IMG/VR virus record: IMGVR_UViG_3300020477_000990
Coordinates: 62,001 to 126,000 of that record
Length of the DNA stretch: 64,000 bases
Strand: one strand, 5' to 3'
Shown here one piece after another: positions 2,214 to 61,108 of the stretch. Numbering within the stretch: the first letter of the stretch is position 1; every line of letters starts with the position of its first letter. The position numbers and the translations under genes are program-made. Under the pieces are notes generated by a model that worked only from the letters and a program-made list of their open reading frames with translations, made no database searches and had not been told where the DNA came from.

Positions 2214-2227
2214 GAGTTGCTATGTCC

Positions 2228-2245
2228 GATAAATACTGCTATAAT
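2228..2245 (+). promoter_or_regulatory. Promoter: ATAAATA box followed by extended -10 TGCTATAAT
   Basis: TGCTATAAT at 2237-2245 in the short gap before the desaturase-sufB operon. Confidence 0.45.
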
Positions 2246-2275
2246 AAGCTAAAGTAATTTAATAAAGTGGAAAAG

Positions 2276-32659: not shown

Positions 32660-32956
32660 ATGATAGGCGATAACTATAACAAGGTATTAGCTAATCATAT
32701 CTTCAATAGATTAGAAGAAATACAAACAGATGAGCATAGGATTCTAAATCAACCTAAATTATGGGCATCAGGCTTTCTTTTTACGGTAAATGACATTGAA
32801 AATATCATACAAGAAGTAAATAGTGCTAGTTTTGACGAAAGGGCATTATGGCACGACAAAATAAAACCCACAGAGGGCGACGTAAAGTCGGAAGTAAAAA
32901 AAGAAGAAACAGACGTAGACAAAGAAAGAAAAGAAGATAGTTCATATCTTGACTAA
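32660..32956 (+). CDS. Hypothetical protein
   Basis: ATG 32660 right after the upstream stop. Confidence 0.55.
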   Translation: MIGDNYNKVLANHIFNRLEEIQTDEHRILNQPKLWASGFLFTVNDIENIIQEVNSASFDERALWHDKIKPTEGDVKSEVKKEETDVDKERKEDSSYLD

Positions 32957-32977
32957 TCATATATTTTAAAGTATAAT
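32949..32977 (+). promoter_or_regulatory. Sigma70 promoter of the tmRNA gene, TTGACT-N17-TATAAT
   Basis: Near-consensus boxes. Confidence 0.8.
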
Positions 32978-32983
32978 TACTAT

Positions 32984-33228
32984 TGTAACGTTGAAGTTAT
33001 TGGAATAGATTATACGGACGTCGGGGCAGTACCGACCACCTCCACCAAAATTATACAAGTTTCGGGGGTGAACTAGGATCGACGGTAATTCGAAAGAATA
33101 ATGGAGTTGCCCGGATGTAAGCTCGGTTAACGCGAACACATTTACAAATGCAGATGAAAATCTAGCACTTGCGGCCTAGTTAATAGGCTAACGGGGTTGG
33201 CAAGTACCTGGCAACAGAAACTTGCCGT
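32984..33228 (+). ncRNA. ssrA: Circularly permuted two-piece tmRNA (alphaproteobacterial type), tag ADENLALAA
   Basis: Acceptor piece with T-arm GTCGG-GGCAGTA-CCGAC and CACCTCC-A-CCA (ends 33047); 16-nt intervening segment; coding piece starts GGGGGTGAACTAGGATCGAC (33064); G3.U70 pair; tag ORF 33150-33179; outer ends approximate. Confidence 0.92.
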
Positions 33229-33231
33229 TTA

Positions 33232-47721: not shown

Positions 47722-48755
47722 TAAACCATAACCTCTAATCTATTTAATAAACGTTCTTCTAACGCAGTCATATCTAAACCATCAACAGCATAATTCATAT
47801 CTGTTCTTCTATGCATACAAGTAATTTGATCCATATAAAATATATCACCATCTTGCCATACATGATCATAGATATATTCTGGAGTAACATACTCATCCAT
47901 AATTCTTTGTTTAAGTTCTTTCCATTGATTTGATGCTACATAATCTTCAGCTAATATTTTTTTATGTTCATCATCGTATAATATTTTAGTAGTACCATCA
48001 GCAATTTCATTTGATATATCAACAACTTGACTAGGAGTAAATCTTAAACCTTCTTTACCATTTGGAGCAACTTGTACTAATGGTTGTTGTTTAATGTTTA
48101 ATTTAATAGCATCTTTATATTTGTCCATATCTTCTTTAGTTGACATTTCATCAGTACCATGAATATCATCATAACCTTCTTCACCTGGTTTAGGTAAGTC
48201 TGGCATAATACCTTCATCACCTGGAACTACACCCCAAAGTACATTTAATTTTTTTAATAGTTCTTTGTTTTCTTGAGGTTCTTTTTCAAATCTATCTATC
48301 ATTTGGCATACTTGAGTAATACTACCTGTTGTTCCTTTAACTCCTTGTAGTCCTACAAAGTTTGCCGCAGGATTAGTACTATCAGTTTCATTGTTATGCC
48401 AATTTAATCTTTTAGAAATACCAGTAGGCATTCCAGCATATCTTCCTTCTTTTGTTTTCTTTGCTGTTACTTTCCACATACCAGGAAGTATAGTTTTACC
48501 TTCATCATCTAAATAGCCAGTCCAACCAGTTGGTTCTGGGATACCTGCTTGTAATCCAAATGTGCTAATTTTACCTAGGCGTCCTGTAAGCTCATAATAC
48601 TGCTTTGCTGTATAGTTAATTTTAGGTAACACTACAACTAGTTCGTTAGTTAGCAATTTTTTAAGCTCAGCTATTTCGCCCCATTTAAATGGATATGAAA
48701 GCTCTGTTACAGATGCCCCCATATTTCCAAATCCTTTGAGTGGTGATACTTTCAT
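47721..48755 (-). CDS. TauD-like Fe/2OG enzyme with HxN motif
   Basis: WHNNETD; HVWQDGDIFYMDQITCMHRR. Confidence 0.78.
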   Translation of the reverse strand: MKVSPLKGFGNMGASVTELSYPFKWGEIAELKKLLTNELVVVLPKINYTAKQYYELTGRLGKISTFGLQAGIPEPTGWTGYLDDEGKTILPGMWKVTAKKTKEGRYAGMPTGISKRLNWHNNETDSTNPAANFVGLQGVKGTTGSITQVCQMIDRFEKEPQENKELLKKLNVLWGVVPGDEGIMPDLPKPGEEGYDDIHGTDEMSTKEDMDKYKDAIKLNIKQQPLVQVAPNGKEGLRFTPSQVVDISNEIADGTTKILYDDEHKKILAEDYVASNQWKELKQRIMDEYVTPEYIYDHVWQDGDIFYMDQITCMHRRTDMNYAVDGLDMTALEERLLNRLEVMV

Positions 48756-48931
48756 GGCTATTTTCTCCTGCTTTTATTTTATTTATCGAGAAATATATAA
48801 TTATATAATCACTTATTTTTAGCTTAAAATGGTTAAATATAACTGAGCAGGGAGACGCGACTCGGCTCGGAATCTATAATAACATATAAACAAAGTATAT
48901 GTATAATATATCGATATAGGAGCAAATTAAA

Positions 48932-50284
48932 ATGGCAAGTTATGCAATTCAAAGACGTAGAGGAACAGCAGTAGAACACGGTTCTTTTACAGGTTTAGCA
49001 GGCGAGTTGACAGTTAACACTACGAGAAATTCAGTTCACGTACATGACGGTTCAGCGGCAGGCGGTCACGAATTAGCGAAAATCGACTTATCGAACGTAG
49101 CTTCAACTTCAATCGGTGCTCACTTACTTCCTTCAGCAAACGTAACTTACAACTTAGGTTCATCTTCAAAAATGTGGGGTGATATCTACGTAGGTCCTTC
49201 AACACTTTATATTAATGGTGTTGCGGCAATGGGTGTTGACTCAGGTGACGTTACTTTATCTGGTGATACAGATGAAAACGTTGTTGTAAAAGCACTTGGT
49301 TCAGGTGATGTTGAATTAACTCCAGCAACTGGTTCAGTTCAGTTAAAAGGTAACATTCAAGTTGCAGATGGAAAAGCATTTTCATCAGCAGGTTCGGAAA
49401 TCGACTTCAATTCTGACATTCAATTAAATTCAAACGATATCTTAGGCGTTGGTACAGGTAACATAGGCGCAAGTTCGGCTATGCCTAGATCATATGCTGA
49501 TACTAGATATGCAATGTTAACTGGCGCACAAAACATCGCTGGTAACAAAACATTCGATAATAACGTAATTGTTTCTGGAGACTTAACAGTTTCTGGTACA
49601 ACTACAACAGTTAATACAGAAACTATCAAATTAGCTGACAACTTAATTGAGTTAAACTCAAACGAAACTGGTGCACCATCAGACAACGCAGGTATTGAAA
49701 TTAACAGAGGTACTTCTGCAAACGTTCAATTCAGATGGAATGAAACTTCAGATATTTGGGAATTAACTTTAGACGGTACTACATTCTACCAAACGTATTC
49801 TACTAATGATGCGGCTACGGCTAATACAGCTAGTAAACTAGTTCTTAGAGATGGTTCAGGTAACTTTGCGGCAGGTACTATAACTGCTACAGCAACTTCG
49901 GCGCAATACGCGGATTTGGCTGAGAGATATGGTTCTGATGCACAATACGATGCAGGTACAGTTGTTGTATTTGGCGGCGATAAAGAAATTACTATGTCTT
50001 CAGCGGCATATGATCATAAAGTAGCAGGTGTTATTTCTTCAGCACCAGCGTACATGATGAACGCAGAAGCAGGTGATGACGCTACTCACCCATTTGTTGC
50101 ACTTACAGGAAGAGTTCCTTGTAAAGTAACAGGTACAGTTAGAAAAGGTGATTTACTTTGCACTTCAGACGTGGCAGGTCATGCTATGGCTGGCGAAGCA
50201 AAATGTGGTCACATGATTGGTAAAGCATTGGAAGATTTCGATGGCGAAACAGGTGTTATCGAAGTATTAATTAACTTAATGTAA
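48932..50284 (+). CDS. Tail fibre/structural protein with Mtd-like N-terminus and C-terminal chaperone-like domain
   Basis: IQRRRGT..FTGLAGELTV..VHDG; IKLADNLIELN..AGIEINRG; YADLAERY...IGKALE. Confidence 0.8.
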   Translation: MASYAIQRRRGTAVEHGSFTGLAGELTVNTTRNSVHVHDGSAAGGHELAKIDLSNVASTSIGAHLLPSANVTYNLGSSSKMWGDIYVGPSTLYINGVAAMGVDSGDVTLSGDTDENVVVKALGSGDVELTPATGSVQLKGNIQVADGKAFSSAGSEIDFNSDIQLNSNDILGVGTGNIGASSAMPRSYADTRYAMLTGAQNIAGNKTFDNNVIVSGDLTVSGTTTTVNTETIKLADNLIELNSNETGAPSDNAGIEINRGTSANVQFRWNETSDIWELTLDGTTFYQTYSTNDAATANTASKLVLRDGSGNFAAGTITATATSAQYADLAERYGSDAQYDAGTVVVFGGDKEITMSSAAYDHKVAGVISSAPAYMMNAEAGDDATHPFVALTGRVPCKVTGTVRKGDLLCTSDVAGHAMAGEAKCGHMIGKALEDFDGETGVIEVLINLM

Positions 50285-50306
50285 TTTAAAGGATAGGAGA
50301 TTCAAA

Positions 50307-50564
50307 ATGGCAAACATTAGATATTTTAACCTTAAAGCATTTAACAATGTTAGAGTTAAGAACTTGGAAATTAAAACTAACGTAAGAAAAGTTTTTGATC
50401 CAGGTAACGGCTTCACTAACTATGGTGATTTAAATGCGGCTACTAGTTTACCACACCGTTATAAAGGTGCTGGTGTACAAGGTACTCCATTATCAACTGG
50501 TTTTGATATGGGAAGCATTGCAAAATCTTCAGTTGACACAATCGACTGGGGTTCGATCGCTTAA
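50307..50564 (+). CDS. Small probable virion protein
   Basis: AGGAG RBS; C-terminal DMGSI/DWGSI repeats; structural-gene codon usage. Confidence 0.55.
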   Translation: MANIRYFNLKAFNNVRVKNLEIKTNVRKVFDPGNGFTNYGDLNAATSLPHRYKGAGVQGTPLSTGFDMGSIAKSSVDTIDWGSIA

Positions 50565-50578
50565 TAATTAAAATATTT

Positions 50579-50611
50579 GAGAAGGGCTTACAGAAATGTA
50601 GGCCCTTTCTC
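50579..50611 (+). terminator. Intrinsic terminator
   Basis: GAGAAGGGCTTAC-AGAAAT-GTAGGCCCTTTCTC. Confidence 0.75.
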
Positions 50612-50663
50612 TTGGTATATAAACTTATACGTTAATATACAATGATAATCATAGCTAATATGC

Positions 50664-50671
50664 TATAAATA
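50664..50671 (+). promoter_or_regulatory. T4-type late promoter TATAAATA
   Basis: Exact box in the gap upstream of the 1028-aa fibre gene; short motif in an AT-rich genome. Confidence 0.6.
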
Positions 50672-50794
50672 ACTTTACAACCACCCCGAACGAAGGTGGA
50701 TAATAGAATAACAACGAGGCAGACCCTCCCGAAACTTTAATTTAATTTAATCGAGGAATAAACAAAATGTTTATTCACAAGGGAGAAATATACT

Positions 50795-53700
50795 ATGGCT
50801 AATGTTAAAAACTTTGGGCTATCAGGTATCGGTTCTGACGTACAATTTGGTAAAAGTGGCGGTCGTTTAATTTACGATTCAGCTTCTTCTTTCTTCAAAT
50901 TTACTACAGACGGTTCAACACTTGCACAGATTAGAGTTGCTACGACTCCATCTAACGCAAATGATGTTGCTTCTAAATCGTATGTTGATGCTACTAAATC
51001 AGGTCTTGATGTAAAAGATTCTGTTAGAGTGGCTACAACTGCGGCTGGTACTTTAGCTTCTAGCTTTGAAAACGGCGATGCTATCGACGGCATAACACTT
51101 GCGACTGACGATAGAATCTTAATTAAAAACCAGGCTGACGGTTCTGAAAATGGTGTTTACACAGTAAACGCATCAGGGGCTCCAACTAGAGCAACTGACT
51201 ACGACGCGAACTCTGAAGTTTCTGGTGGTGCTTTCTGTTTTGTAGAAGAAGGTACAACTAACGCAGATACTGGTTGGGTATTATCAAATGATGGTGCTAT
51301 CACAGTTGGTACAACTGCATTGACTTACACTCAGTTCTCTGGTGCAGGCTTAATTACAGCTGGCGCTGGTATGACTAAATCAGGTAACACTTTATCAGTT
51401 AACGTTGATGATACTACATTAGAAGTTAACGGTTCAGACAACCTGCAAATTAAATCAGACTGGACAGGTCAAAATACAATTACTACACTAGGTTCAATTG
51501 CTACTGGAACTTGGGCGGCAACTGATGTTGCTGTAGCACACGGTGGTACAGGTGCTTCTACGGCTTCTGGTGCAAGAACTAATTTAGGTGTTGCAATCGG
51601 ATCAGACGTACAGGCATACGATGCTCAATTGGCAGATGTTGCCGGTTTAGCGGTAACTGACGGTGGTATCATCGTTGGTGACGGTTCTAACTTCGTGTTA
51701 GAAACTGGTAATACAGCAAGAACATCACTAGGCTTAGGTACTGGTGATACTCCGACTTTCAACGGTGCGGCAATGGGTTCAGCGGCTATTACAGGCGTTG
51801 CAGATCCTTCAAACGCACAAGATGCCGCTACTAAGGCATACGTTGACGCGGCTACGGCTGGTCAAGATACACTTGCTGAAATGTCTGACACTAACATCAC
51901 AACTCCAGCTGATGGTTCTATGTTATTATATGACACAGGAAACTCAAAATGGATTGACAATGTAATGTCAGGTGATGCTACTATGACTGATGGTGGTGTT
52001 ATTACTTTAACAGACGGAAACTCTACAAGAACTAATTTAGGTCTTGCTATTGGTTCTGATGTACAGGCATATGACGCTCAATTGGCTGACGTGGCTGGCT
52101 TGGCTGTTACTGATGGTGGTTTCATTGTTGGTAATGGTTCTAACTTCGTATTAGAAACAGGCGCAACTGTTAGAACATCTTTAGGTTTAGGTTCAATTGC
52201 AACTCAAGCCGCTGATGCAGTAGCAGTAACAGGTGGTTCAATTACTGGAATCACTACATTTACTACAGGTACTTTAGGTTCTACAGCTACTTTCACTGGC
52301 GACGGTGAATTTACTGGTAACTTAACAGTTGGTGGTAACTTAACAGTTTCAGGTTCTAAAATTACTTTAGACGTTGGAACTGTGTCTTCAGAAGACAAAT
52401 ACATCCAAGTTAACTCTGGTGCAACTTCGCAAGAAACAGGTTTAGCAGGTGGTTTAGAAGTTAAAAGATCTTCTACTGCTGACACTAACCAATTTGCTTT
52501 CATTTCATTTGATGATTCAATTGACACATGGGCATTTAAAACTGGTTCGGCTAACCAAGCATCTACATCAGACGCAACTGTACGTTTTGGTACAGTTTCA
52601 GCTGGTACTTGGAATGGTACTGCAATTAGCAGAACATACGGTGGATTCGGCGCTTCAACTGCCGGTCACGGTAACAACTCACTTGTTGAAGCAGACGGTG
52701 GCGAGATCACTGTAGGCTCTTCAGGTCAATACTTAAGATCAGACGGTACTAACTATGCGGCATCTGCCTTACAGGCAAGTGACTTAAACGGTACTGTAGC
52801 TGTTAACCAAGGTGGTACTGGTATTACTGCTTTAGGATCAGCGAACAAATTCTTAGGTTCAACTGGTTCAGCTAACCAATATGACTACATCGGCGCTATC
52901 AGAGATACATCTGGTGTTGTTGGTTTAGAAATTAATGGTGCTTTAACAGATAATATCAAATTAAGATTGTCAAATACTTCATCTAACGTAACACTTCAAG
53001 CTATCGACCCTGATAACGGTTCAGCTGACATCGACCTAGTTCTTAAAGGACAAGGCGACGGTGTTGTTGTAATTTCTGAATCAGCTGGTGGTAACTCACT
53101 TGTTATGGCGGACGACAATATGGACTTAACTATCTCAGGTGGTGCGGCGAGCGGTGCTCATGCTGGTGACTCTGTTATCAAAGGTGGTAACGGTACTGGT
53201 GCGTACAATTCAGGTGACGTTAAAATCCAAGGTGGTACTGGTGGTGCGGCTGAAGGTAAAGTTAAAATTTTAGACTCATCTTCAAACGAAGTTGCATTGT
53301 TCGAAAGAACTGCTTCTGCTGTTAATGAATTATCATTCACTAACGCGGCGGCTTCAGGTGCTCCAACTATTTCATCAACTGGTGATGACACTCATATTAA
53401 CATCGCATTATCTCCAAAAGGTAATGGTGTTGTTACAGTTCCAGCGAACTATGAGTCATTAACTATTACTGATGACACTCTTGTTACTAAAGCATGGGTG
53501 AATGCTAACGTAGTTACTTCAACTGATGACCTGACTCTTAGAGCGGCTATCACTACAGGTGCAACTACAGGTGCAATTGGTACAATGCCAAATGCAGGTT
53601 CAACAACTTATTACGTATCTAAAGTAATCGTATACGTTTCAACTGCTTTCTCAGGAAACTCAGTTGATCACGTTACTTTATCAGATGGTACTACAACTTG

Positions 53701-53881
53701 GGTAGCTGATGCTGACGCTGATGTTTCTACAGCTGGTACTTACGTAATTGATGTTCCTTTTGCTACAGCAACGGCTGGCGGCGCTACTTTCACTTTATCT
53801 TACAGAGATGCAAGTGCAAATTTAGTTGCTCCAACAGGTGGTGCTGGTATTGTTACTGTTGAATACAAAGCATTAACTTAA
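50795..53881 (+). CDS. Long tail-fibre/virion structural protein (1028 aa)
   Basis: Gly/Ala/Thr/Ser-rich; DVASKSYVD and DAATKAYVD knob repeats; LDVKDSVRVATT..DRILIKNQ..ENGVY fibre module; internal duplication. Confidence 0.85.
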   Translation: MANVKNFGLSGIGSDVQFGKSGGRLIYDSASSFFKFTTDGSTLAQIRVATTPSNANDVASKSYVDATKSGLDVKDSVRVATTAAGTLASSFENGDAIDGITLATDDRILIKNQADGSENGVYTVNASGAPTRATDYDANSEVSGGAFCFVEEGTTNADTGWVLSNDGAITVGTTALTYTQFSGAGLITAGAGMTKSGNTLSVNVDDTTLEVNGSDNLQIKSDWTGQNTITTLGSIATGTWAATDVAVAHGGTGASTASGARTNLGVAIGSDVQAYDAQLADVAGLAVTDGGIIVGDGSNFVLETGNTARTSLGLGTGDTPTFNGAAMGSAAITGVADPSNAQDAATKAYVDAATAGQDTLAEMSDTNITTPADGSMLLYDTGNSKWIDNVMSGDATMTDGGVITLTDGNSTRTNLGLAIGSDVQAYDAQLADVAGLAVTDGGFIVGNGSNFVLETGATVRTSLGLGSIATQAADAVAVTGGSITGITTFTTGTLGSTATFTGDGEFTGNLTVGGNLTVSGSKITLDVGTVSSEDKYIQVNSGATSQETGLAGGLEVKRSSTADTNQFAFISFDDSIDTWAFKTGSANQASTSDATVRFGTVSAGTWNGTAISRTYGGFGASTAGHGNNSLVEADGGEITVGSSGQYLRSDGTNYAASALQASDLNGTVAVNQGGTGITALGSANKFLGSTGSANQYDYIGAIRDTSGVVGLEINGALTDNIKLRLSNTSSNVTLQAIDPDNGSADIDLVLKGQGDGVVVISESAGGNSLVMADDNMDLTISGGAASGAHAGDSVIKGGNGTGAYNSGDVKIQGGTGGAAEGKVKILDSSSNEVALFERTASAVNELSFTNAAASGAPTISSTGDDTHINIALSPKGNGVVTVPANYESLTITDDTLVTKAWVNANVVTSTDDLTLRAAITTGATTGAIGTMPNAGSTTYYVSKVIVYVSTAFSGNSVDHVTLSDGTTTWVADADADVSTAGTYVIDVPFATATAGGATFTLSYRDASANLVAPTGGAGIVTVEYKALT

Positions 53882-53931
53882 TAGGTTAGTATAGAGCTAA
53901 CTTGTTAAGCTCAAACACTAATTAATAATTG

Positions 53932-53963
53932 AACCCGGGTCTAGAAATAGGCCCGGGTTTTTT
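53932..53963 (+). terminator. Intrinsic terminator
   Basis: AACCCGGGTCT-AGAAAT-AGGCCCGGGTT followed by T-run. Confidence 0.85.
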
Positions 53964-53968
53964 GTTGA

Positions 53969-54196
53969 TTATTTTTTATCTACGAATGAATATAATTCAT
54001 TAGCACAATCAAGTATTTCTTTAGTACTAGGAAATACTGGAGCATCTTTTGTTGAAAGTATAACTCCTGTTTCAGGATGTCGTGTTACAGACATTTCCCA
54101 AGTTTGATATGCTCTATTATATTTTTCTTGAAGTAATCCCTGAGCTTGACCTAAGATGTCAGCACGGATTTCGTATGCGTTTTTATTTGTAGACAT
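53969..54196 (-). CDS. Small hypothetical protein of a type common in T4-like marine phages
   Basis: NAYEIRADIL..A..LL, P...EIL..A.ELY.FV pattern; AGGAGG RBS. Confidence 0.65.
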   Translation of the reverse strand: MSTNKNAYEIRADILGQAQGLLQEKYNRAYQTWEMSVTRHPETGVILSTKDAPVFPSTKEILDCANELYSFVDKK

Positions 54197-54645: not shown

Positions 54646-55881
54646 CTACTGTGAAATTCGCCCTAATATTGAACACATTTTTTCAGCTGAATACCCACGT
54701 GCTTTATCATAATAGGCCAATAAATCTTGGGTGTTTTTGTAGGTGTACGTTGTTTTACGTTTTTTAATTAGTTCTATAAAGTCAGATACAAAACTATATT
54801 TTGTAGCTTCAAAAGGCGATCCTGCTGATCTAATTAATAAAAGAACTTCATTAATAACTTCTTCTTTTATATCATCTGGAAGTATAGCCAAGTCTAATGG
54901 TTTAGGCCACATTACTAATACAGGAATAAATTCATCAAAGTTATTTTCTTCTGTGTATCTAATTAAATCAGGAAGTTGATCTAAATTTAATAATTGTATT
55001 GCTGATGTTAATACTGAACTAATATTATTAAAACCTTTTTCTTTAATTAATCTGTTAAACTTATATTGATTATTAAAAACTTTATTCCAAGTTGCAGGCC
55101 ATCTAATATATTCAAATGTACTACCCATTCCATCTGTAGACCAATGCACTTCAAATTTTTGAAACTTATTCATTATGTCTATCATCTTTGTTAAGTCAGT
55201 TGTACCATTTGTTACCATCATTATAGAAATGTTTCTTGCATATTTTGTTTCAGATAATCTTTTAATAAATTCTCTAAAGCCTTCTAATAATGTAGGCTCA
55301 CCTCCTGTAAATTTTATTTTTTGTATAGTATGAGCTGTACCTAATAATTCATTTAATTGCTTTTCATGGAAGTTAGTATTATGAGCATCATCTGGAATAT
55401 GTTTTTTTAAATGTAAAGGAACTTTATGTTGCTCTTTTTCTTTAACGTGTAAAGATGAACTATGTCCATCACACATAATACAAGCAAGATTACATTTGTT
55501 ACCAAACTTTATATCTAATGTTCTTAATTCTAAATGTTTATCTTTTTTAATTTTATTTAAAAAATCTGGATCAATATCTTCATAACGTTTTGTAATAGAA
55601 TATCTTTTACTCATATTGTATGCACCAGACTGTTCATATTGATAACATCTAGTACAAGACTTAACTGGTTTATTATCTAACATTTTTTGTCTAATGTCAT
55701 TTAATACTTTACTGTTTTTCCAATTATTAATAAATGAATCTTTATATAAATCTGCTTCAACAGTTTCTGAATAACAACATAACATTGAATGGCCTTGTGC
55801 TGAATTGGCTATTTCAGTAAATGGTAAAGCACAAAAATACTTGCCATGATCATTTAAAAACTTTTCATATTCTCTACTCAT
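54646..55881 (-). CDS. N-terminal-twitch radical SAM protein (similar to 43743..45014)
   Basis: FCALPF..LCC..CTRC; KFGNKCNLACIMC; TGGEP. Confidence 0.85.
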   Translation of the reverse strand: MSREYEKFLNDHGKYFCALPFTEIANSAQGHSMLCCYSETVEADLYKDSFINNWKNSKVLNDIRQKMLDNKPVKSCTRCYQYEQSGAYNMSKRYSITKRYEDIDPDFLNKIKKDKHLELRTLDIKFGNKCNLACIMCDGHSSSLHVKEKEQHKVPLHLKKHIPDDAHNTNFHEKQLNELLGTAHTIQKIKFTGGEPTLLEGFREFIKRLSETKYARNISIMMVTNGTTDLTKMIDIMNKFQKFEVHWSTDGMGSTFEYIRWPATWNKVFNNQYKFNRLIKEKGFNNISSVLTSAIQLLNLDQLPDLIRYTEENNFDEFIPVLVMWPKPLDLAILPDDIKEEVINEVLLLIRSAGSPFEATKYSFVSDFIELIKKRKTTYTYKNTQDLLAYYDKARGYSAEKMCSILGRISQ

Positions 55882-57130
55882 TTAGTTCTGCCCCAATGAC
55901 AGGTGTTAATCCTTTTACTGCTTTATTAAACATAGCTTCTGTCATATCGTTATGTTTTGATTTTTGTACACATAATCCACAGCCACATATTTTATTTGGA
56001 CAAGTTATTACAGGCATTTTACCTGTTGCTAATTGTTTTTCTAATCTTAATAATACTTTTTCACTTTCTGATATCTTACCAATAGGCCCACGTTTACCAC
56101 CAAAATTTGCACGACAAGTTTGATGGTGTAGTATATTATCATATTCTTGTTCAATATGTAACCAATTCCAATTAATTAAGCAAGACCAATCTTTGTATTC
56201 TGTTGAACACGCAAACACACTTGGATTCCATTTATCAGTATCAAGTTCTTTATTATTGTTATTATAATGATCATCAGTTAATGTATAAAATGTTCTTTGC
56301 CCACAGCAAGGTCTTCCTAAACTTTTTCTACCTTCATCTTTTTTAGGTTCAACTTTTGCTTTTTGTTTTTGTACTTTTTCTTGATCATCTTTATATTCAT
56401 ATTCAGCATCATTGTTTTCATCTATTTTTTTAGGTTGCTTTTGATTATTTTCTTTTTTATTTCTAATTGCCCAAAACTCTCTAAACCATTTATGTTGTTC
56501 TGGAGTATATCTATGATTGTACTTGTCATTTTCATAGCTCTCTCCAATAATTCTTGGTACAAATTTTACATTATCTCTTGTAAACTTTCCAACTAAATCA
56601 ATACATTCATTAAAGTATTCTTCTTTAGCATGAAACATTAAATTAACTTTGTGTCTAACATTTGAATCTTTTAATTGATAAATTCTATCTATTACTTTAT
56701 TTTTTATTTTTTGATCTGCTTCACAATGATAACTTACTGTTACACTATCAACATTATCAATTAATTTTGTACAATATTTTTCTGACATGGCACCATTAGT
56801 TGTTACATCAACTATTACATCATCATCATTTTGATTGTGTATGTATTCACACATATCTAAAAAGTTTGGATTGTTAGTTGGCTCACCGCCTGTAAAACCA
56901 ATGTTCCACTTACGTTTGTAAGTCATATATGATTGTAAAAGTTTTTTATAATCAAAAACAAACTTACTTGTTTTAATTAATGTTTCTAAACTTGCGTGAG
57001 GTGAAGTATTATTATGTCTATGTGAAGGACAATATGTACAATCAAAATTACATCTTAAACCTAAATCCCAAGTTACTTCAAATGAGTAAGGATTTTTTAT
57101 ATTATTATCTATTGCAATTATCTCTGACAT
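55874..57130 (-). CDS. Radical SAM protein with C-terminal twitch-like cysteines (same type as 15961..17127)
   Basis: WDLGLRCNFDCTYC; FTGGEPT; C-terminal C...CPNKICGCGLC. Confidence 0.85.
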   Translation of the reverse strand: MSEIIAIDNNIKNPYSFEVTWDLGLRCNFDCTYCPSHRHNNTSPHASLETLIKTSKFVFDYKKLLQSYMTYKRKWNIGFTGGEPTNNPNFLDMCEYIHNQNDDDVIVDVTTNGAMSEKYCTKLIDNVDSVTVSYHCEADQKIKNKVIDRIYQLKDSNVRHKVNLMFHAKEEYFNECIDLVGKFTRDNVKFVPRIIGESYENDKYNHRYTPEQHKWFREFWAIRNKKENNQKQPKKIDENNDAEYEYKDDQEKVQKQKAKVEPKKDEGRKSLGRPCCGQRTFYTLTDDHYNNNNKELDTDKWNPSVFACSTEYKDWSCLINWNWLHIEQEYDNILHHQTCRANFGGKRGPIGKISESEKVLLRLEKQLATGKMPVITCPNKICGCGLCVQKSKHNDMTEAMFNKAVKGLTPVIGAELNE

Positions 57131-57846
57131 TAATATCTATTAAACGCCCAATATCTTTCATGACACCACCAACAATCTTCACAAGGTGTAAGGTAACCAT
57201 TTGTTTGTTCAAATGTTCCTTCACATGACCAAGTCAACGGAAATAAATTGCTCATTAAGTTTTCTTGTTTGTAAATGTCAGCAATAAATTTTTTATCTGT
57301 ATTAAAAAAAGGTCTATGAGAAGAACCATCACTAGTAACTAGTTCATGATTAACTTTTGGATCTCGTCTATTTTTTTGATCAGTATCATAAGGCATTTCC
57401 CCTTTCGGTGGGTTAGATGTTATACCATCATATAAGACATCCCACACGCCTGTTTCTTCATTTTGTTTATTTCTATCTTGAAACTCTTTCCATTCAGTTT
57501 GATTTACATCTTTTAAATCTGGATAATAAACTAAATGAGGTAACATATTTCTAAAATTAAGTATTTCAGTAATTTTATTAATAACATGGGTTGCTTTTAT
57601 AGGATTCCATGGACGTTGTCTTCTAACTGACATTGGTTGTATCTTTACATCTAAATTATTTCTTATTACTTCTTTACAAAGTAAGTAAAGTAAAGCACTA
57701 GAGTCTGCTCCACCAGAACACCATATTCCTAGAGTCTTAACCTTGCGTCCATTATTGACAACACTTGGAATTATGATTTCAACTGATTCTGTTTTATCAA
57801 TATTATAATATTTTGCCGATACTTCTGTTAGTATTTCAAATGTCAT
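57130..57846 (-). CDS. QueC-like PP-loop ATPase (third paralog)
   Basis: CSGGADS; SC...CEDCWWC; N-terminus like 19340..20185 (EIIIP.VVNN). Confidence 0.75.
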   Translation of the reverse strand: MTFEILTEVSAKYYNIDKTESVEIIIPSVVNNGRKVKTLGIWCSGGADSSALLYLLCKEVIRNNLDVKIQPMSVRRQRPWNPIKATHVINKITEILNFRNMLPHLVYYPDLKDVNQTEWKEFQDRNKQNEETGVWDVLYDGITSNPPKGEMPYDTDQKNRRDPKVNHELVTSDGSSHRPFFNTDKKFIADIYKQENLMSNLFPLTWSCEGTFEQTNGYLTPCEDCWWCHERYWAFNRY

Positions 57847-57870: not shown

Positions 57871-58620
57871 TTATTTGTAGTTTTTAATTACATTTTCTGA
57901 GTAGTCATTCAATGCACTTCTATCGTATCCACCGTCAACATTTGTATCAATTAATGAATGCATTATGAAGTCTGCCATTATATTATGTTTTTCTTGTGTG
58001 TTAAAATGATTTTCACATGACTCAATGTCTTCTATAGAGCACCCGTCCATAGTTGCAATGCTCATACAACTTGGTCTTATTTCTAAACCATTTTCCCAAG
58101 TATGCAAATATTTTATATTATCAGGATGATAGTCAGTAACATTATGCCCATAAGACCATAAGTGAATTATTTTTCTGTCGGTTGGAATTTTACTCAAAAC
58201 AGTTTGATCAAACCAAAACAAACAAGATTGATATTCAGCTATTTCTTTTTTATCATCTTGAATATATTTAAAATATTTTTCACTTGCATCTACATATTCA
58301 TCTTTAACTTTACCTTTTTTCCACCATACTTTTTTTGGATCAGGGTTTAAATGAATACCATCTTTGTTATAAATTCTAGCACTAGAAGTCCAGCAAAATA
58401 TTAATATATCTGGAACATTAATAATACCTTCTTCGTTTGGTTTTAATGTAAATTGATTTAATGGAATATCCCAATATGATGTTCCACCTTGCCCAGAATG
58501 AACAATGTCTAGATTAAATTTTTCTGCAACAATGTGAGGCCAAGTTTTGAGATCACCTTTTTTTTCTTTCCAAACTTCTACAAAGCTATCTCCGTATAGG
58601 CCAATTTTAATATGACTCAT
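57871..58620 (-). CDS. SGNH/GDSL-like hydrolase or acyltransferase
   Basis: YGDSF block I, WP..V, GQGG, NHF near the C-terminus. Confidence 0.55.
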   Translation of the reverse strand: MSHIKIGLYGDSFVEVWKEKKGDLKTWPHIVAEKFNLDIVHSGQGGTSYWDIPLNQFTLKPNEEGIINVPDILIFCWTSSARIYNKDGIHLNPDPKKVWWKKGKVKDEYVDASEKYFKYIQDDKKEIAEYQSCLFWFDQTVLSKIPTDRKIIHLWSYGHNVTDYHPDNIKYLHTWENGLEIRPSCMSIATMDGCSIEDIESCENHFNTQEKHNIMADFIMHSLIDTNVDGGYDRSALNDYSENVIKNYK

Positions 58621-58633
58621 ACTTATATTTATT

Positions 58634-59224
58634 TTAAGTTTTGTATACTTCGTGAACGTAATTGTAGATGTCTTCCCAATTGTTAACTTTTTTAACTTTT
58701 GGATTTGAATATTGTACGTTGTACGGATGGTTCATTAATATAGGATGAAGATTTTGCTTTAATGCTGTTTCAATATTAATGATTCTATCATCAATGAAAA
58801 GTAAATTATTATTTTTAAACTCTTCTAATGCTTCAGATTTATCAGCACCTGCTGGTAAACATTTAACATCAATAAAAGTTTCCACATCAAAATAATCTTC
58901 AAGGTTTAAGTAGCGATAGTATTGTGCAATAGGTTTATCACTTAAAGAAGTAATAGCAATAAATTTAAAGCCTTCTTCTTTAAGTTTAGGAATCCATATC
59001 TCTGCTTCACGTAAAGGTTCTAAAATTGAACACGCCATTGACGAATTAAATTCTTCTCTCTTTATCATTCCTTCTTGAAATGCTATTCCAAACTCGTTAT
59101 GTATCTCTGCATCATGATGTATTACACCTGTTGATGAATAGCCTTGAAGTTCCATCCATTTAACAAATGCTGTATGCCAATCAAATACAACGCCGTCAAT
59201 GTCAGTTAAGATAATTTTTTCCAC
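58634..59224 (-). CDS. HAD-family nucleotidase-like phosphatase
   Basis: LTDIDGVV, AITS, FIDDR..N, HPYN; GTG start with AGAGG RBS. Confidence 0.8.
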   Translation of the reverse strand: MEKIILTDIDGVVFDWHTAFVKWMELQGYSSTGVIHHDAEIHNEFGIAFQEGMIKREEFNSSMACSILEPLREAEIWIPKLKEEGFKFIAITSLSDKPIAQYYRYLNLEDYFDVETFIDVKCLPAGADKSEALEEFKNNNLLFIDDRIINIETALKQNLHPILMNHPYNVQYSNPKVKKVNNWEDIYNYVHEVYKT

Positions 59225-59564
59225 GATATAATACCTCTCTCTGTATAATATTTAATGTGAATGAGATGTATATTATCTGCAGGATAATTGAAATTAAAAA
59301 TATCTTTCTTTAAGTATTAAGAAAACCATTTATAACATATTTTTATGGAGGTCTGTGTGGGATAATTACATACACCTACTAGGCAAAAAGAGTTCATTAA
59401 ATTGAAGCTCATATATAGTTAGGTTTATTATTAGTAAGTTAGCTACGATAATCGTTTAAAAATGCTTATAAATTTACTTACATTATAAACAATAATAACC
59501 TATAATGTTAGAGGCTAGACGACTTATAATAGTTTAAAAATGTCTTTTATAATGCCTCATTAGA

Positions 59565-59655
59565 GAGAACCTTAGATGTTCTCATTTTAGGAAGCCACAG
59601 TTTGCTTCCATTTAGGAAGACTTAGATTCTTCCATTTCGTAGACATTTGGTCTAC
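59565..59655. repeat. Array of four 6-bp hairpins at 24-25-nt spacing
   Basis: GAGAAC-CTTAGAT-GTTCTC; GGAAGC-CACAGTTT-GCTTCC; GGAAGA-CTTAGAT-TCTTCC; GTAGAC-ATTTG-GTCTAC; ATTT linkers. Confidence 0.85.
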
Positions 59656-59701
59656 ACCGAAGGTGTACTAAAGTACTTAAAATGGCCTTCTTGCAGTTAT
59701 A

Positions 59702-59735
59702 CCTCGGCCGTCGATGACATAAGCCCGAGGTTTTT
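59702..59735 (+). terminator. Terminator-like hairpin closing the non-coding region
   Basis: CCTCGG...CCGAGG followed by T5. Confidence 0.55.
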
Positions 59736-59795
59736 GCATATAATACGCAACAATTTAACAAATATGGTTAAATAACTTTAAGGAACCTAAATAAT

Positions 59796-60056
59796 ATGGC
59801 TCGTAAAAAGCAAACCTACACTATCGGTGACATTCCTAAAGCAAAAGAAGTGAAGAAAGTAACTCACACTATTCCTTCAACGCCTAAAAAATCATCTAAG
59901 CCAAAGAAAACAACTAAAATTAATAAGAAGATATCTAAAAGAGAAAAATTTCACGATTACCAGCAGGAAGAATCTAAAGGCATTGTAATGAACAATGCGT
60001 TTGCAGAAGCCTTTGCAAAAGCTGGGATAACAAAAGAAAGTTTTAATAAAAAGTAA
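59796..60056 (+). CDS. Lys-rich small basic protein
   Basis: AGGA RBS; TAAATA boxes upstream; PKK/KK-rich tract. Confidence 0.6.
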   Translation: MARKKQTYTIGDIPKAKEVKKVTHTIPSTPKKSSKPKKTTKINKKISKREKFHDYQQEESKGIVMNNAFAEAFAKAGITKESFNKK

Positions 60057-60245
60057 TTACTTTTTAGGTTTAAACTGAGTAAGTTTAGTTACTTTACCTT
60101 TTGCAACATCAACTGATCTACTAACTTTACTACCAACACCTTTAACACCGTCTACTGCTTTAGACGTAATGCCTTTAGCACCGTCAGTAATTTTAGATCC
60201 CGCTTTCTTAATAGGGTCTGTAATTTTTTTAAATAAGTTTTTCAT
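60057..60245 (-). CDS. Basic peptide with 11-residue amphipathic repeats
   Basis: KKAGSKITDGA/KGITSKAVDGV/KGVGSKVSRSV/DVAKGKVTKLT. Confidence 0.6.
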   Translation of the reverse strand: MKNLFKKITDPIKKAGSKITDGAKGITSKAVDGVKGVGSKVSRSVDVAKGKVTKLTQFKPKK

Positions 60246-60251
60246 AATGTA

Positions 60252-60473
60252 CTATTTATCTAGATTTTCTACTATTACAGGTAGTACAGGATAATTATCT
60301 TCTACTGTACGTTCTTCTTCAGTAGTTATTGCCTTAGGCATAACAAATGTCTTTTGAATGCTTATATCTGGCATATCATTGAAGCTATTGCCCGAAATAC
60401 TTACTTTAGTACCACTACAAGCTGTTAATAACAGCAATACTAATATAATTATAACTAACCAAAATACTCTCAT
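60252..60473 (-). CDS. Small lipoprotein
   Basis: Hydrophobic leader and lipobox LTAC. Confidence 0.65.
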   Translation of the reverse strand: MRVFWLVIIILVLLLLTACSGTKVSISGNSFNDMPDISIQKTFVMPKAITTEEERTVEDNYPVLPVIVENLDK

Positions 60474-60658
60474 GTAGAAGTTTTACCGCTAAATCCTTTA
60501 GCTACTTTACCCTTATTAGGACCTTTTTTGATAACATAACTTTGTGTACCATGCCCACCAATTTCAACTTCTTTACGTAAAGTCCTATGAAGTACTTTTT
60601 CTTTATTCTTTTTTTGAAGATTCTTACTATGTGCTTCTAATCCTTTAGTATCTCTCAT
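60470..60658 (-). CDS. Small basic hypothetical protein
   Basis: Coupled ORF in the minus-strand operon. Confidence 0.55.
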   Translation of the reverse strand: MRDTKGLEAHSKNLQKKNKEKVLHRTLRKEVEIGGHGTQSYVIKKGPNKGKVAKGFSGKTST

Positions 60659-60660
60659 AA

Positions 60661-60894
60661 CTAATCCTTTTTAGAAAATATATCGCCGTACTTGGATCTA
60701 AAAGATGCAACACGACCTTTTTCTTTAACACGTTTTGCTTTGCCTGGATTCCATGCTGGATGATCTGTTGGATCGGTTTCTAGTTTCATTACATCACCTT
60801 CTTTACCCCATGTTGATTTTGTTTTAAAGGTAGTACCATCAGTTCGTTGAACGATGATCATATGGTAGTCAGGATGTGTACCGTCTTTTTTCAT
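60661..60894 (-). CDS. rpmE: Ribosomal protein bL31, Cys-free alphaproteobacterial type
   Basis: [34 protein letters not shown]....GRV..F..KY. Confidence 0.9.
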
Positions 60895-60895
60895 A

Positions 60896-61108
60896 TTACT
60901 CCAATATCAATTTATTAATGGACCATGATCCATCAATGTTTTGCTCTAGCTCTGCTTTAGATCTGATACATTTATATTGTATCTGATTTTTGGCTTGTCT
61001 TTCGGCTACTCTCTTGCCTTTTAAACATTCGGACATAGAGTCTTGTATTCTATGTTCCTTAATCTCATGATTAACAAACATTAAAAGAGCTATAACTGTT
61101 TCGATCAT
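60896..61108 (-). CDS. Small hypothetical protein (two Cys, hydrophobic N-terminus)
   Basis: [25 protein letters not shown]; GGAG RBS. Confidence 0.6.

What the first reader, a model, noticed from the sequence alone, without database searches (positions are those of the whole stretch)
59240..59735. Second 0.5-kb non-coding region containing a 25-nt-periodic hairpin array
Seen: four 6-bp stems start at 59565, 59590, 59615 and 59639. Stem sequences differ but stay perfectly paired (GAGAAC, GGAAGC, GGAAGA, GTAGAC), the loop CTTAGAT recurs twice, and the linkers are ATTT(T)A/ATTTC. Overlapping inverted repeats follow (TACACC-GAA-GGTGTA, GTAC-TAAA-GTAC), then a CCTCGG/CCGAGG-T5 terminator. More hairpins lie upstream (ATTATC/GATAAT, GAGGC/GCCTC). 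Stems that vary yet stay paired imply selection on structure. Inference: a multivalent protein-sponge or decoy RNA (by analogy with CsrB or phage mimics of type III antitoxin RNA), or a cruciform/iteron replication or packaging element.
Basis: partly seen in the sequence, partly recalled or inferred. Interest (0 to 1): 0.65.

Follow-up and report, generated by a model that had tools for sequence, protein, structure and literature searches.

The report
Modular hairpin RNA of marine phage
The four evenly spaced hairpins are real and form part of a previously undescribed, about 360-base structured non-coding RNA gene of a 328-kb uncultivated marine T4-like phage; the RNA is built from repeated stem-loop units whose number varies between relatives, which fits an RNA that binds several copies of a protein, possibly the phage's own Hfq.

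Summary
Observation confirmed. Four perfect 6-bp hairpins start at 59565, 59590, 59615 and 59639. This is the only place in the 328-kb genome with four such hairpins within 110 nt, and no genome shuffle reached four.

They are not a stand-alone element. They lie in the 3' half of a non-coding RNA gene on the + strand, about 59373-59735. It has a conserved promoter-like pair and ends in an intrinsic terminator.

The same RNA occurs in 22 of 30 related marine metagenome contigs and a few viral contigs. Stems covary (12 of 64 checked pairs), while neutral sites in the neighbouring gene are only 56-61% identical. The region appears in contigs from four marine metatranscriptomes. Rfam has no match.

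The family is modular. A stem with an invariant UUAAAAAK bulge occurs 1 to about 7 times, and simple hairpins occur 0 to 5 times. The simple hairpins share stem sequences with those modules.

Best reading, at moderate confidence: a trans-acting multivalent protein-binding RNA, a sponge or scaffold. The leading candidate partner is Hfq, which this phage itself encodes. That link is circumstantial.

The replication or packaging reading is not supported, and neither is the type III antitoxin analogy.

The parts
59340..59366 (+). Promoter-like pair: TTTTTA (59340-59345), a 15-nt spacer, then GATAAT (59361-59366). The inferred transcription start is about 59373.
   Evidence: The two hexamers, always 15 nt apart, are found in the close group, the distant group and L038. 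The spacer sequence varies in the distant group. This is inferred, not mapped. The exact pattern is not a common promoter type in this genome.
59354..59374 (+). Possible 5' hairpin P0 (TGTGTG / CATACA). It overlaps the -10-like hexamer, so the 5' end of the RNA is uncertain (about 59345-59375).
   Evidence: There is one compensatory pair plus G-U to A-U changes among 9 relatives. This is weak evidence, because it rests on a single evolutionary event.
59375..59411 (+). Conserved 5' segment CCTACTAGGCAAAAAGAG, followed by a small variable hairpin.
   Evidence: CCTA(CTA)GGGCA is shared by the close and distant groups. The hairpin region carries indels.
59420..59502 (+). Module A, a long hairpin.
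- P1: TAGGTT / AACCTA
- P1b
- P2: GTAAGT / ACTTAC
- P3: AGC / GCT
- P4: ACG / CGT
- Invariant 3' bulges: TTAAAAAT and TATAAATTT

The 3' strand of P1 and P1b carries the tract AAACAATAATAAC (59487-59499), which reads as four AAN triplets.
   Evidence: - P4 covaries: ACG/CGT becomes AGT/ACT.
- P1 is kept through changed sequence in L013 and in the distant group.
- This module is the only part that BLAST detects in distant relatives.
- Substitutions in the AAN tract in L021 and L035 keep the AAN periodicity over most of the tract.
59511..59558 (+). Module B, a paralogue of the upper part of module A.
- GAGGC / GCCTC
- AGAC / GTCT
- ACT / AGT
- Bulge TTAAAAAT
   Evidence: Six of its 12 pairs show compensatory double changes. 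For example, GAGGC/GCCTC becomes GGTAC/GTACC, GGTGC/GCACC or GAAGC/GCTTC.
59565..59655 (+). The reported array: four perfect 6-bp hairpins, H1 (59565-59583), H3 (59590-59609), H4 (59615-59633) and H5 (59639-59655), joined by A/U-rich linkers.
   Evidence: - Sequence and folds.
- Unique in the genome.
- Relatives carry 3 to 5 units, drawn from five types (GAGAAC, GAGAAGC, GGAAGC, GGAAGW, GKAGAC).
- Orthologous compensatory changes occur: GGAAGA/TCTTCC becomes GGAAGT/ACTTCC, and GTAGA/TCTAC becomes GGAGA/TCTCC.
- H3 and H4 are a 25-nt tandem duplicate.
59654..59676 (+). Two small overlapping hairpins: ACACC-GAA-GGTGT and GTAC-TAAA-GTAC.
   Evidence: GTAC/GTAC becomes GTGC/GCAC in L009 and L008, a compensatory change.
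59677..59695 (+). Segment TTAAAATGGCCTTCTTGCA just before the terminator. GGCCTTCTTGCA is invariant in the close group.
   Evidence: Alignment. It is absent from the distant group. No complementary target was found in the phage genome.
59702..59735 (+). Intrinsic terminator: CCTCGG ... CCGAGG followed by TTTTT.
   Evidence: - It is folded.
- It covaries: CCTCGG/CCGAGG becomes CCTTGG/CCAAGG.
- It is homologous to CCCCGG...CCGGGG in the distant group and in G006.
59796..60056 (+). 86-aa lysine-rich ORF directly downstream. It is a possible partner protein, not part of the RNA itself.
   Evidence: - It is conserved downstream of the RNA in seven close-group loci; the script's terminator pattern missed L009 and L008, whose aligned sequence begins with the same start, ATGGCTCGTA.
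- It has no Pfam, PHROG or PADLOC family.
- It is predicted to be disordered.
- In G006 a 29-aa arginine/lysine-rich ORF occupies the same position.

Best explanation
The hairpin array is the 3' portion of an independently transcribed, highly structured non-coding RNA gene on the + strand, roughly 59373-59735 (about 360 nt). The host phage is an uncultivated 328-kb marine T4-like phage whose host is probably an alphaproteobacterium.

**Anatomy.** The RNA is modular:
- Two paralogous modules, each a short stem enclosing a small apical hairpin with an invariant A-rich 3' bulge. The consensus is RRGC-GAC-loop-GU-UUAAAAAK-GCYY.
- Then 3-5 mini-hairpins that reuse the basal stem sequences of those modules (RAAGC/GCUUY and UAGAC/GUCUA), separated by A/U-rich linkers.
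- Then an intrinsic terminator.

Across the family the number of bulged modules ranges from 1 to about 7, and the number of simple hairpins from 0 to 5.

**Proposed mechanism (inferred, not shown).** The RNA acts in trans as a multivalent binding platform, a sponge or scaffold, for an RNA-binding protein. It would work like CrcZ or CsrB. Changing the number of units would change its capacity.

**Candidate partner.** The leading candidate is Hfq, either the 68-aa Hfq that the phage encodes or the host's. It could bind the A-rich bulges and the AAN-repeat tract on its distal face, and the U-rich linkers next to hairpins and the terminator tail on its proximal face or rim. A second candidate is the small basic protein encoded immediately downstream.

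**What is shown:** the structure, its conservation and covariation, the modular copy-number variation, the presence in RNA libraries, and the presence of a phage hfq gene.

**What is inferred:** the promoter and 5' end, action in trans, protein binding, and the identity of the partner.
For: **The array is real and non-random**
- Sequence, folds and uniqueness in the genome.

**It is a conserved RNA gene**
- Nine relatives keep the whole intergenic region at 75-100% nucleotide identity. Four-fold degenerate sites of the adjacent HAD gene are only 56-61% identical in the seven relatives at 75-80%.
- Thirteen more distant loci keep the core and the terminator.
- Covariation: 11 pairs by RNAalifold, and 12 of 64 hand-checked pairs, including the terminator.
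- Inserted or deleted units are 22-26 nt long, not multiples of 3, and the longest ORFs are 42-49 aa.

**It is expressed**
- Contigs from four metatranscriptomic libraries in three studies cover 59392-59722.
- The deepest contig in the 4-kb stretch examined lies on the RNA (24 against 8-14 on neighbouring genes in run X18).

**It is a transcription unit of its own**
- The downstream gene differs between relatives: lysine-rich ORF, nitroreductase-like or radical SAM.

**It is modular and multivalent**
- The UUAAAAAK-bulge module occurs once in the distant group, twice in the window and in L038, and at least five to seven times in G006.

**Candidate partners**
- The phage encodes Hfq (PF17209, 67.5 bits; G000:C1:7144-7350).
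- G006 carries both an RNA of this family and an Hfq-like gene.
- The phage Hfq clade is marine and has a similar spread of identities to the HAD gene's relatives.
- Hfq homologues matched only 5 of 50,697 phage records, all below 46% identity.
- No CsrA, ProQ, Ro60 (TROVE) or RegA gene was found in the phage.
Against: - No binding was tested, so the Hfq link rests on co-occurrence and motif resemblance only.
- Co-occurrence on a single contig is shown only for G000 and G006.
- G002 is 55% complete, has the RNA, and shows no Hfq. G003, G004 and G005 are 11-23% complete, have an Hfq-like gene, and show no RNA.
- The terminator tail has only 5 U in the window and UUUAU in the distant group. Genes for Hfq-binding sRNAs in E. 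coli have 7 or more T (abstract of PMC5558911, seen).
- In the close group the AAN tract is base-paired within P1 and P1b.
- The module is not enriched elsewhere in the phage genome (7 found, 6.65 expected), so no set of mRNA sites that a sponge would mimic was found. The host genome could not be examined.
- Loops of the simple hairpins vary freely, so the hairpins might be only structural.
- Contigs cannot show the strand, the ends or the abundance of an RNA, and DNA carry-over in the RNA libraries cannot be excluded.
Confidence: 0.45

Rival explanations
1. The RNA is a base-pairing regulatory sRNA. Conserved single-stranded segments pair with host or phage mRNAs. Candidates are CCUACUAGGCAAAAAGAG, the AAN tract, and GGCCUUCUUGCA in the close group. 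Under this reading the hairpins only stabilise the RNA or recruit a chaperone.
For: - It is a separate transcription unit with a terminator.
- It has invariant unpaired stretches.
- The phage encodes the RNA chaperones Hfq and two CSD proteins, which assist such pairing.
Against: - No complementary site within 2-4 mismatches was found in the phage genome.
- The most conserved unpaired motif is repeated 1-7 times per RNA. That is typical of protein sites rather than seed sequences.
- GGCCUUCUUGCA is absent from the distant group.
- Host targets could not be searched.
Confidence: 0.18
2. The simple hairpins have no specific ligand. They are tandemly duplicated structural padding. They might shield the functional 5' core from 3' exonucleases, or insulate its folding from the terminator. 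Their number would drift freely.
For: - Copy number varies from 0 to 5 among relatives, while the core is constant.
- Loops are nearly free to vary.
- H3 and H4 are a recent 25-nt duplication.
Against: - Stems and the first linkers are invariant over lineages whose neutral sites are about 57% identical.
- The stems reuse the basal stem sequences of the bulged modules. That points to sequence-specific constraint rather than the need for any stable hairpin.
Confidence: 0.15
3. It is a cis-acting leader, riboswitch-like or protein-dependent. The conserved core closed by P1 senses a ligand or protein, and the terminator attenuates transcription into the downstream gene.
For: - The core has covarying stems around invariant internal-loop nucleotides, is closed by P1 and is followed by a terminator.
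- Two modules in tandem recall tandem aptamers.
- One RNA-library contig (X17, 59528-59930) runs across the terminator into the downstream ORF.
Against: - In the window about 200 nt (59503-59701), including module B and the roughly 100-nt hairpin array, separate the core from the terminator.
- No antiterminator pairing was evident by eye, and no dedicated search was run.
- The downstream genes are unrelated to each other, and a TAAATA late-promoter-like motif of their own lies between the terminator and the start codon.
- No Rfam riboswitch matched.
Confidence: 0.08
4. It is a decoy substrate or inhibitor for a host endoribonuclease or an RNA-targeting defence. Examples would be a type III antitoxin mimic, or an RNase E decoy acting through the hairpin-flanked A/U linkers.
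For: - The layout is promoter, repeated units, terminator, small ORF.
- Unit number varies, as it does for pseudo-ToxI expansion in phage PhiTE (from memory, not checked).
- UUAG appears enriched in linkers and loops (an eye count, not computed).
Against: - The units are not near-identical direct repeats of 34-45 nt.
- The downstream ORF has no match to any model in the defence-system library, PADLOC, or in Pfam.
- Nothing is known about host defences.
Confidence: 0.07
5. It is a DNA-level element, such as a replication origin, a packaging site or a cruciform.
For: The region is AT-rich, lies between divergent genes and has many inverted repeats.
Against: - G-U pairs, the terminator and the promoter-like pair give it a strand.
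- It is present in RNA libraries.
- There are no iterons.
- Cumulative GC skew peaks near 44-46 kb of the window, where gene orientation switches, not near 59.5 kb.
Confidence: 0.04

Closest known systems
CrcZ / CrcY / CrcX of Pseudomonas (Hfq-sequestering RNAs)
   Same: These are RNAs of a few hundred nucleotides, each a transcription unit of its own with a terminator. They carry several A-rich motifs (AAnAAnAA) that bind the distal face of Hfq and titrate it (from memory, not checked). The present RNA has an AAN-repeat tract and 1-7 A-rich bulges, and an hfq gene lies in the same genome.
   Different: - No sequence or structure match to any Rfam family, CrcZ included.
- The repeated A-rich element here is a 7-8-nt bulge in a defined stem, not a free AAnAAnAA stretch.
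- The RNA is encoded by a phage, and that phage brings its own Hfq.
- Binding has not been tested.
CsrB / RsmY / RsmZ (CsrA/RsmA sponges)
   Same: They are multivalent RNAs made of many short hairpins with short linkers. The number of units varies between species, and the RNA ends in an intrinsic terminator.
   Different: - Their defining GGA motifs sit in the hairpin loops. Here GGA lies in the 5' arms of some stems and not in loops.
- No CsrA gene was found in the phage.
Hfq-dependent sRNAs (the Hfq-binding module: a hairpin preceded by a U-rich stretch and followed by a poly-U tail)
   Same: Hairpins flanked by A/U-rich single strands, plus an intrinsic terminator.
   Different: The terminator tail is short: 5 U, or UUUAU in the distant group. 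Genes for E. coli Hfq-binding sRNAs have 7 or more T (PMC5558911). The RNA is also far longer and more repetitive than typical sRNAs.
ToxI and other type III antitoxin RNAs, and phage pseudo-ToxI
   Same: A repeat array, then a terminator, then an ORF. Repeat number can expand.
   Different: - The units here are hairpins with different sequences and a period of about 25 nt. They are not near-identical direct repeats of 34-45 nt.
- There is no ToxN-like protein downstream.

Membership tests
Any Rfam 15 family | A covariance-model match | tested here: not met
   No match at E up to 10 in 58000-61000. At gathering thresholds over the whole window, only tmRNA and tRNAs matched.
CsrB/RsmZ-type CsrA sponge | Multiple GGA motifs presented in hairpin loops or single-stranded linkers | tested here: not met
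   The loops are CUUAGAU, CACAGUUU, AUUUG and so on. GGA occurs only in the 5' arms of stems.
CsrB/RsmZ-type CsrA sponge | A CsrA/RsmA partner is present | tested here: inconclusive
   No CsrA (PF02599) was found in the phage genome. The host genome was not available.
CrcZ-type Hfq sponge | Several AAnAAnAA motifs in one RNA | tested here: inconclusive
   There is one AAN-repeat tract (59487-59499), and it is paired in the predicted fold. There are also two A5 bulges, and up to 7 in G006.
CrcZ-type Hfq sponge | An Hfq partner is present | tested here: met
   The phage encodes a 68-aa Hfq (PF17209, 67.5 bits). G006 has both the RNA and an Hfq-like gene.
CrcZ-type Hfq sponge | The RNA binds and titrates Hfq | not testable with these tools
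   This needs gel-shift, ITC or CLIP experiments.
Hfq-dependent sRNA | An intrinsic terminator followed by 7 or more U | tested here: not met
   The tail is UUUUUG in the window, and UUUAUG in the distant group. The criterion comes from the abstract of PMC5558911.
Type III toxin-antitoxin antitoxin RNA (ToxI-like) | Tandem, near-identical direct repeats of about 34-45 nt | tested here: not met
   TRF finds only 2.1 copies of a 25-nt unit at 82% identity. The other units differ in sequence.
Type III toxin-antitoxin antitoxin RNA (ToxI-like) | A ToxN/AbiQ-type endoribonuclease gene directly downstream | tested here: not met
   The 86-aa lysine-rich ORF has no Pfam, PHROG or PADLOC match and is predicted to be disordered.
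Replication origin with iterons, or a packaging site | Three or more direct repeats (iterons), and a strand-skew switch or a terminus | tested here: not met
   No direct-repeat family has 3 or more copies. Cumulative GC skew peaks near 44-46 kb of the window, where gene orientation switches, not at 59.5 kb.
Riboswitch or cis-acting leader | The same downstream gene class, and an aptamer coupled to the terminator by alternative pairing | tested here: not met
   The downstream genes are unrelated to each other. About 100 nt of autonomous hairpins lie between the core and the terminator. No antiterminator pairing was evident by eye, and no dedicated search was run.

The most novel reading that the evidence does not exclude
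A virus that carries both halves of an Hfq regulatory pair. One half is its own minimal, core-only Hfq. The other is a dedicated modular RNA whose number of binding units evolves quickly. Together they would take over or blunt post-transcriptional control in a streamlined marine alphaproteobacterial host. I found no described example of a phage-encoded Hfq partnered with such an RNA.
Probability: 0.2. Interest if true: 0.8.

Novelty: new variant of a known kind. Interest (0 to 1): 0.6.

Why it matters
**Rarity.** Structured non-coding RNAs of phages are few, and almost none are known from the abundant uncultivated marine T4-like phages. This family:
- is conserved and shows covariation;
- is present in ocean metatranscriptomes;
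- is not in Rfam.

**A natural experiment.** Unit number varies between relatives: 1 to about 7 bulged modules and 0 to 5 simple hairpins. This variation in valency makes a binding model directly testable.

**The Hfq link.** The same phage encodes an Hfq, and Hfq homologues matched only 5 of 50,697 phage records, all weakly. If the two work together, this would show a virus importing a whole RNA-chaperone circuit.

**If they do not work together,** the RNA still defines a new motif, RRGC-GAC-loop-GU-UUAAAAAK-GCYY, whose ligand is unknown.

Tried and rejected
**Searches for homologues**
- Rfam gave no match.
- BLAST against 50,697 phage records gave none, using either the window's RNA or a distant relative's.
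- An exact search for hairpin H4 in viral contigs found only chance hits in coding regions.
- A pattern search in one genome per prokaryote species found one chance hit in a coding region, so no host copy was detected.
- A terminator-pattern search in viral contigs found only the family members already known.

**Decoy and target ideas**
- Anticodon-stem-loop decoy: rejected. The loops do not keep U33, and the stems do not resemble the five tRNAs in the window that were compared.
- Operator or decoy sites elsewhere in the phage genome: none, either for hairpins with the loop motif or for the bulged module.
- Antisense targets in the phage genome: none.
- Other copies of the RNA in the genome: none.

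**Promoter**
- The exact promoter-like pattern is not a recurrent promoter class in this genome.

**Fold artefacts**
- The long-range pair GGAGGU/GCCUUC proposed by RNAalifold is probably spurious, because it lies upstream of the inferred transcription start.
- RNAalifold on the mixed close-plus-distant alignment failed, because MAFFT did not align the stems consistently.

**Co-occurrence with Hfq**
- This could not be settled on large metagenome contigs. Those records are not held for searching, and the contig look-ups collapsed similar places.
- The match in G004 was a chance hit in a coding region.

**Neighbouring protein and literature**
- The 86-aa neighbour gave no lead in the ESM Atlas.
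- Literature searches found no description of this RNA or of a phage Hfq in this lineage.
Full report
**1. Setting**

The window is G000:C1:62001-126000 of a 328,149-bp virus record with direct terminal repeats, estimated complete. It is about 30% G+C.
- The phage has a T4-type major capsid protein (Gp23, E 6e-97).
- It carries 16 tRNA calls, two of which (tRNA-Ala at each end of the record) lie in the terminal repeats.
- It carries an alphaproteobacterial-type permuted tmRNA.
- Its DNA is found in many marine metagenomes.

So it is an uncultivated marine T4-like jumbo phage. Its host is probably an AT-rich alphaproteobacterium. The host assignment is an inference.

**2. The observation**

The finding lies in a 571-nt gap (59225-59795). 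The gap separates a HAD-like gene on the - strand (58634-59224) from an 86-aa ORF on the + strand (59796-60056).

- The array is the only place in the genome with four non-overlapping perfect hairpins in 110 nt. The criteria were at least 6 bp and at least 2 G/C per arm.
- Thirty dinucleotide-preserving shuffles of the whole genome never gave more than three.
- TRF sees the 25-nt period.

**3. Relatives**

A search of metagenome contigs with the HAD protein returned 30 loci.
- *Close group, nine loci.* L006 to L014, at 75-100% nucleotide identity, keep the whole intergenic region in synteny.
- *Distant group, thirteen loci.* HAD is about 70-75% identical (94% over the partial match in L035). 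These loci keep a shorter version 0.7-1.8 kb upstream of HAD.
- *The other eight loci.* They have too little upstream sequence to judge.
- *More divergent members.* Two sit on IMG/VR contigs: L038, and G006 (loci L073 and L086).

Four-fold degenerate sites of HAD are only 56-61% identical between the window and the 75-80% relatives. Yet long blocks of the intergenic region are invariant. The region is therefore under strong purifying selection.

**4. It is an RNA gene**

*Boundaries.* Conservation starts at a promoter-like pair, TTTTTA-N15-GATAAY (59340-59366).
- The 15-nt spacing is fixed in every close, distant and L038 sequence.
- The spacer sequence varies in the distant group.

Conservation ends at a terminator hairpin, which itself covaries: CCTCGG/CCGAGG becomes CCTTGG/CCAAGG. 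That hairpin is homologous to CCCCGG/CCGGGG in distant members.

*Length.* From the -10-like hexamer to the terminator tail the RNA gene spans 338-392 nt in the close group and 248-290 nt in the distant group.

*Covariation.* RNAalifold finds 11 pairs with compensatory double changes. My own count on named helices finds 12 of 64.

*Strand.* The G-U pairs, the terminator and the promoter-like pair all point to the + strand.

*Not coding.* Unit insertions and deletions are 22-26 nt long. No ORF longer than 49 aa exists.

*Expression.* Contigs from four metatranscriptomic libraries (three studies) cover 59392-59722.
- In run X18 the contig on the RNA has depth 24, against 8-14 on neighbouring genes.
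- Most of the HAD operon is not covered.
- Contigs cannot give the strand or the ends of an RNA, and DNA carry-over cannot be excluded. This supports transcription but does not prove it.

*The 5' end is uncertain.* A possible hairpin P0 (59354-59374), with one compensatory event, overlaps the -10-like hexamer.

**5. Anatomy**

After a conserved 5' segment comes module A (59420-59502).
- It is a long hairpin with helices P1, P1b, P2, P3 and P4.
- It has two invariant A/U-rich bulges on the 3' side, UUAAAAAU and UAUAAAUUU.
- The 3' strand of P1 and P1b carries AAACAAUAAUAAC, four AAN triplets. Substitutions in L021 and L035 keep that periodicity over most of the tract.

Module B (59511-59558) is a paralogue of the upper part of module A. 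Six of its 12 pairs covary.

Then comes the reported array. Relatives carry 3-5 units drawn from five types: GAGAAC, GAGAAGC, GGAAGC, GGAAGW and GKAGAC.
- There are orthologous compensatory changes.
- Stems and first linkers are invariant.
- Loops vary freely.

The distant group has no such hairpins. The exception is L029/L003, which has one hairpin at the same position.

The unit repeated throughout the family is RRGC-GAC-loop-GU-UUAAAAAK-GCYY.
- It occurs once in the distant group.
- It occurs twice in the window and in L038.
- It occurs at least five to seven times in G006.

The stems of the simple hairpins (GGAAGC/GCUUCC and GUAGAC/GUCUAC) match the basal stems of these modules. The array therefore looks like a set of mini-modules that arose by duplication and truncation. 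H3 and H4 are still a recognisable 25-nt tandem duplicate.

**6. Mechanism**

Several features together are the signature of multivalent protein-binding RNAs such as CsrB or CrcZ:
- a separate transcription unit;
- a repeated motif of invariant unpaired nucleotides held in covarying stems;
- copy number that changes between relatives.

I therefore favour a trans-acting sponge or scaffold. This is an inference.

*Candidate partner 1: Hfq.* I screened the phage genome for genes of RNA-binding proteins.
- Not found: CsrA, ProQ, Ro60 (TROVE), RegA.
- Found: two tandem cold-shock-domain genes and an Hfq.

The Hfq is 68 aa, scores 67.5 bits, and has Sm1 and Sm2 motifs that resemble canonical Hfq by eye.
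- It belongs to a clade of 68-aa proteins from marine metagenomes, 68-100% identical.
- Its nearest cellular relatives are alphaproteobacterial Hfq at about 50-60% identity.
- Only 5 of 50,697 phage records matched it, all below 46% identity.
- G006, the contig with the most modules, also carries an Hfq-like gene.

The A-rich bulges and the AAN tract would suit the distal face of Hfq. The U-rich linkers next to hairpins would suit its proximal face or rim. This reasoning rests on established knowledge of Hfq, not on a test made here.

*Caveats for Hfq.*
- The U tail is short compared with the 7 or more T reported for Hfq-binding sRNA genes (PMC5558911).
- The AAN tract is paired in the close group.
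- Incomplete contigs do not show strict co-occurrence.
- The module is not enriched elsewhere in the phage genome.

*Candidate partner 2: a small basic protein encoded directly downstream.*
- It is an 80-86-aa lysine-rich ORF, conserved downstream of the RNA in the close-group loci.
- In G006 a 29-aa arginine/lysine-rich ORF holds the same position.

**7. Rivals**

These were considered and weighted lower. Details are in the Rival explanations section.
- A base-pairing sRNA.
- Hairpins as structural padding only.
- A cis-acting leader.
- A nuclease or antitoxin decoy.
- A DNA element. This has the least support: the element has a strand, it appears in RNA libraries, it has no iterons, and cumulative GC skew peaks near 44-46 kb, where gene orientation switches, not near 59.5 kb.

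**8. Novelty**

Nothing like it was found:
- no Rfam family;
- no match in phage records;
- no host copy by pattern search;
- nothing in the literature searches.

I class it as a new variant of a known kind, namely a modular, probably protein-binding small RNA encoded by a phage. The function is unproven.

**9. Confidence**

| Claim | Confidence |
|---|---|
| It is a conserved, structured RNA gene | about 0.9 |
| It is a multivalent protein-binding RNA | about 0.45 |
| Hfq is the partner | about 0.25 |

Noticed in passing
outside the window: G000:C1:7144-7350 (locus L061:1483-1689, + strand): The phage encodes a 68-aa Hfq (PF17209, 67.5 bits). It sits beside an Hc1 histone-like gene, with a gp44-like clamp-loader gene a few kb downstream in relatives. 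It belongs to a marine clade of 28 clusters of 68-aa proteins (28 of 5.8 billion 90%-identity clusters). Only 5 of 50,697 phage records matched it, all below 46% identity.
   Followed up: partly
outside the window: G000:C1:268318-268717: Two tandem cold-shock-domain genes (PF00313, 83 and 75 bits). This is a second kind of RNA chaperone carried by the phage.
   Followed up: no
window 59796-60056; L086:5727-5816 (- strand): A small, very basic ORF follows the RNA's terminator in two separate lineages. In the window's clade it is an 80-86-aa lysine-rich protein with conserved ends (MAKKKQTYTIGE... and ...NNAFAEAFAKAG). In G006 it is a 29-aa arginine/lysine-rich peptide. Both are preceded by a TAAATA late-promoter-like motif.
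   Followed up: partly
window 32937-33270: A permuted, alphaproteobacterial-type tmRNA gene (Rfam alpha_tmRNA, 131.6 bits; ARAGORN tag peptide ADENLALAA). It hints at the host's class.
   Followed up: no
window 48932-50284, and the G+C-rich stretch 48000-54000: An ORF with a major-tropism-determinant N-terminal domain (Mtd_N, E 1.7e-13) lies in a region of 37-41% G+C, against about 30% elsewhere. It may be the target gene of a diversity-generating retroelement. The reverse transcriptase and template repeat were not looked for.
   Followed up: no
window 399-8075, 12159-13502, 33232-34584, 54646-57846: The window holds unusual auxiliary genes for a phage: a TonB-dependent receptor, SufBD, a carbamoyltransferase, at least five radical-SAM proteins, and weak QueC- and QueE-like hits next to the RNA locus.
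   Followed up: no
window 59290-59310 (+) and 44892-44912 (-): A 21-nt stretch, GAAATTAAAAATATCTTTCTT, recurs with 20-21 identical bases inside the coding region 43743-45014. This may be chance in AT-rich DNA, or a shared regulatory site.
   Followed up: no
window 59243-59257 (- strand) and 59766-59774 (+ strand): Invariant TTAAATA-type motifs lie just upstream of the HAD gene and of the lysine-rich ORF. The distant relatives have CATAAATA at the corresponding place. These resemble the T4 late promoter TATAAATA.
   Followed up: no
L093:2108-2323 (a relative's contig, near its hfq): A ribosomal protein L33 gene (PF00471) and a ferredoxin gene are called on a related phage contig a few kb from hfq.
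   Followed up: no
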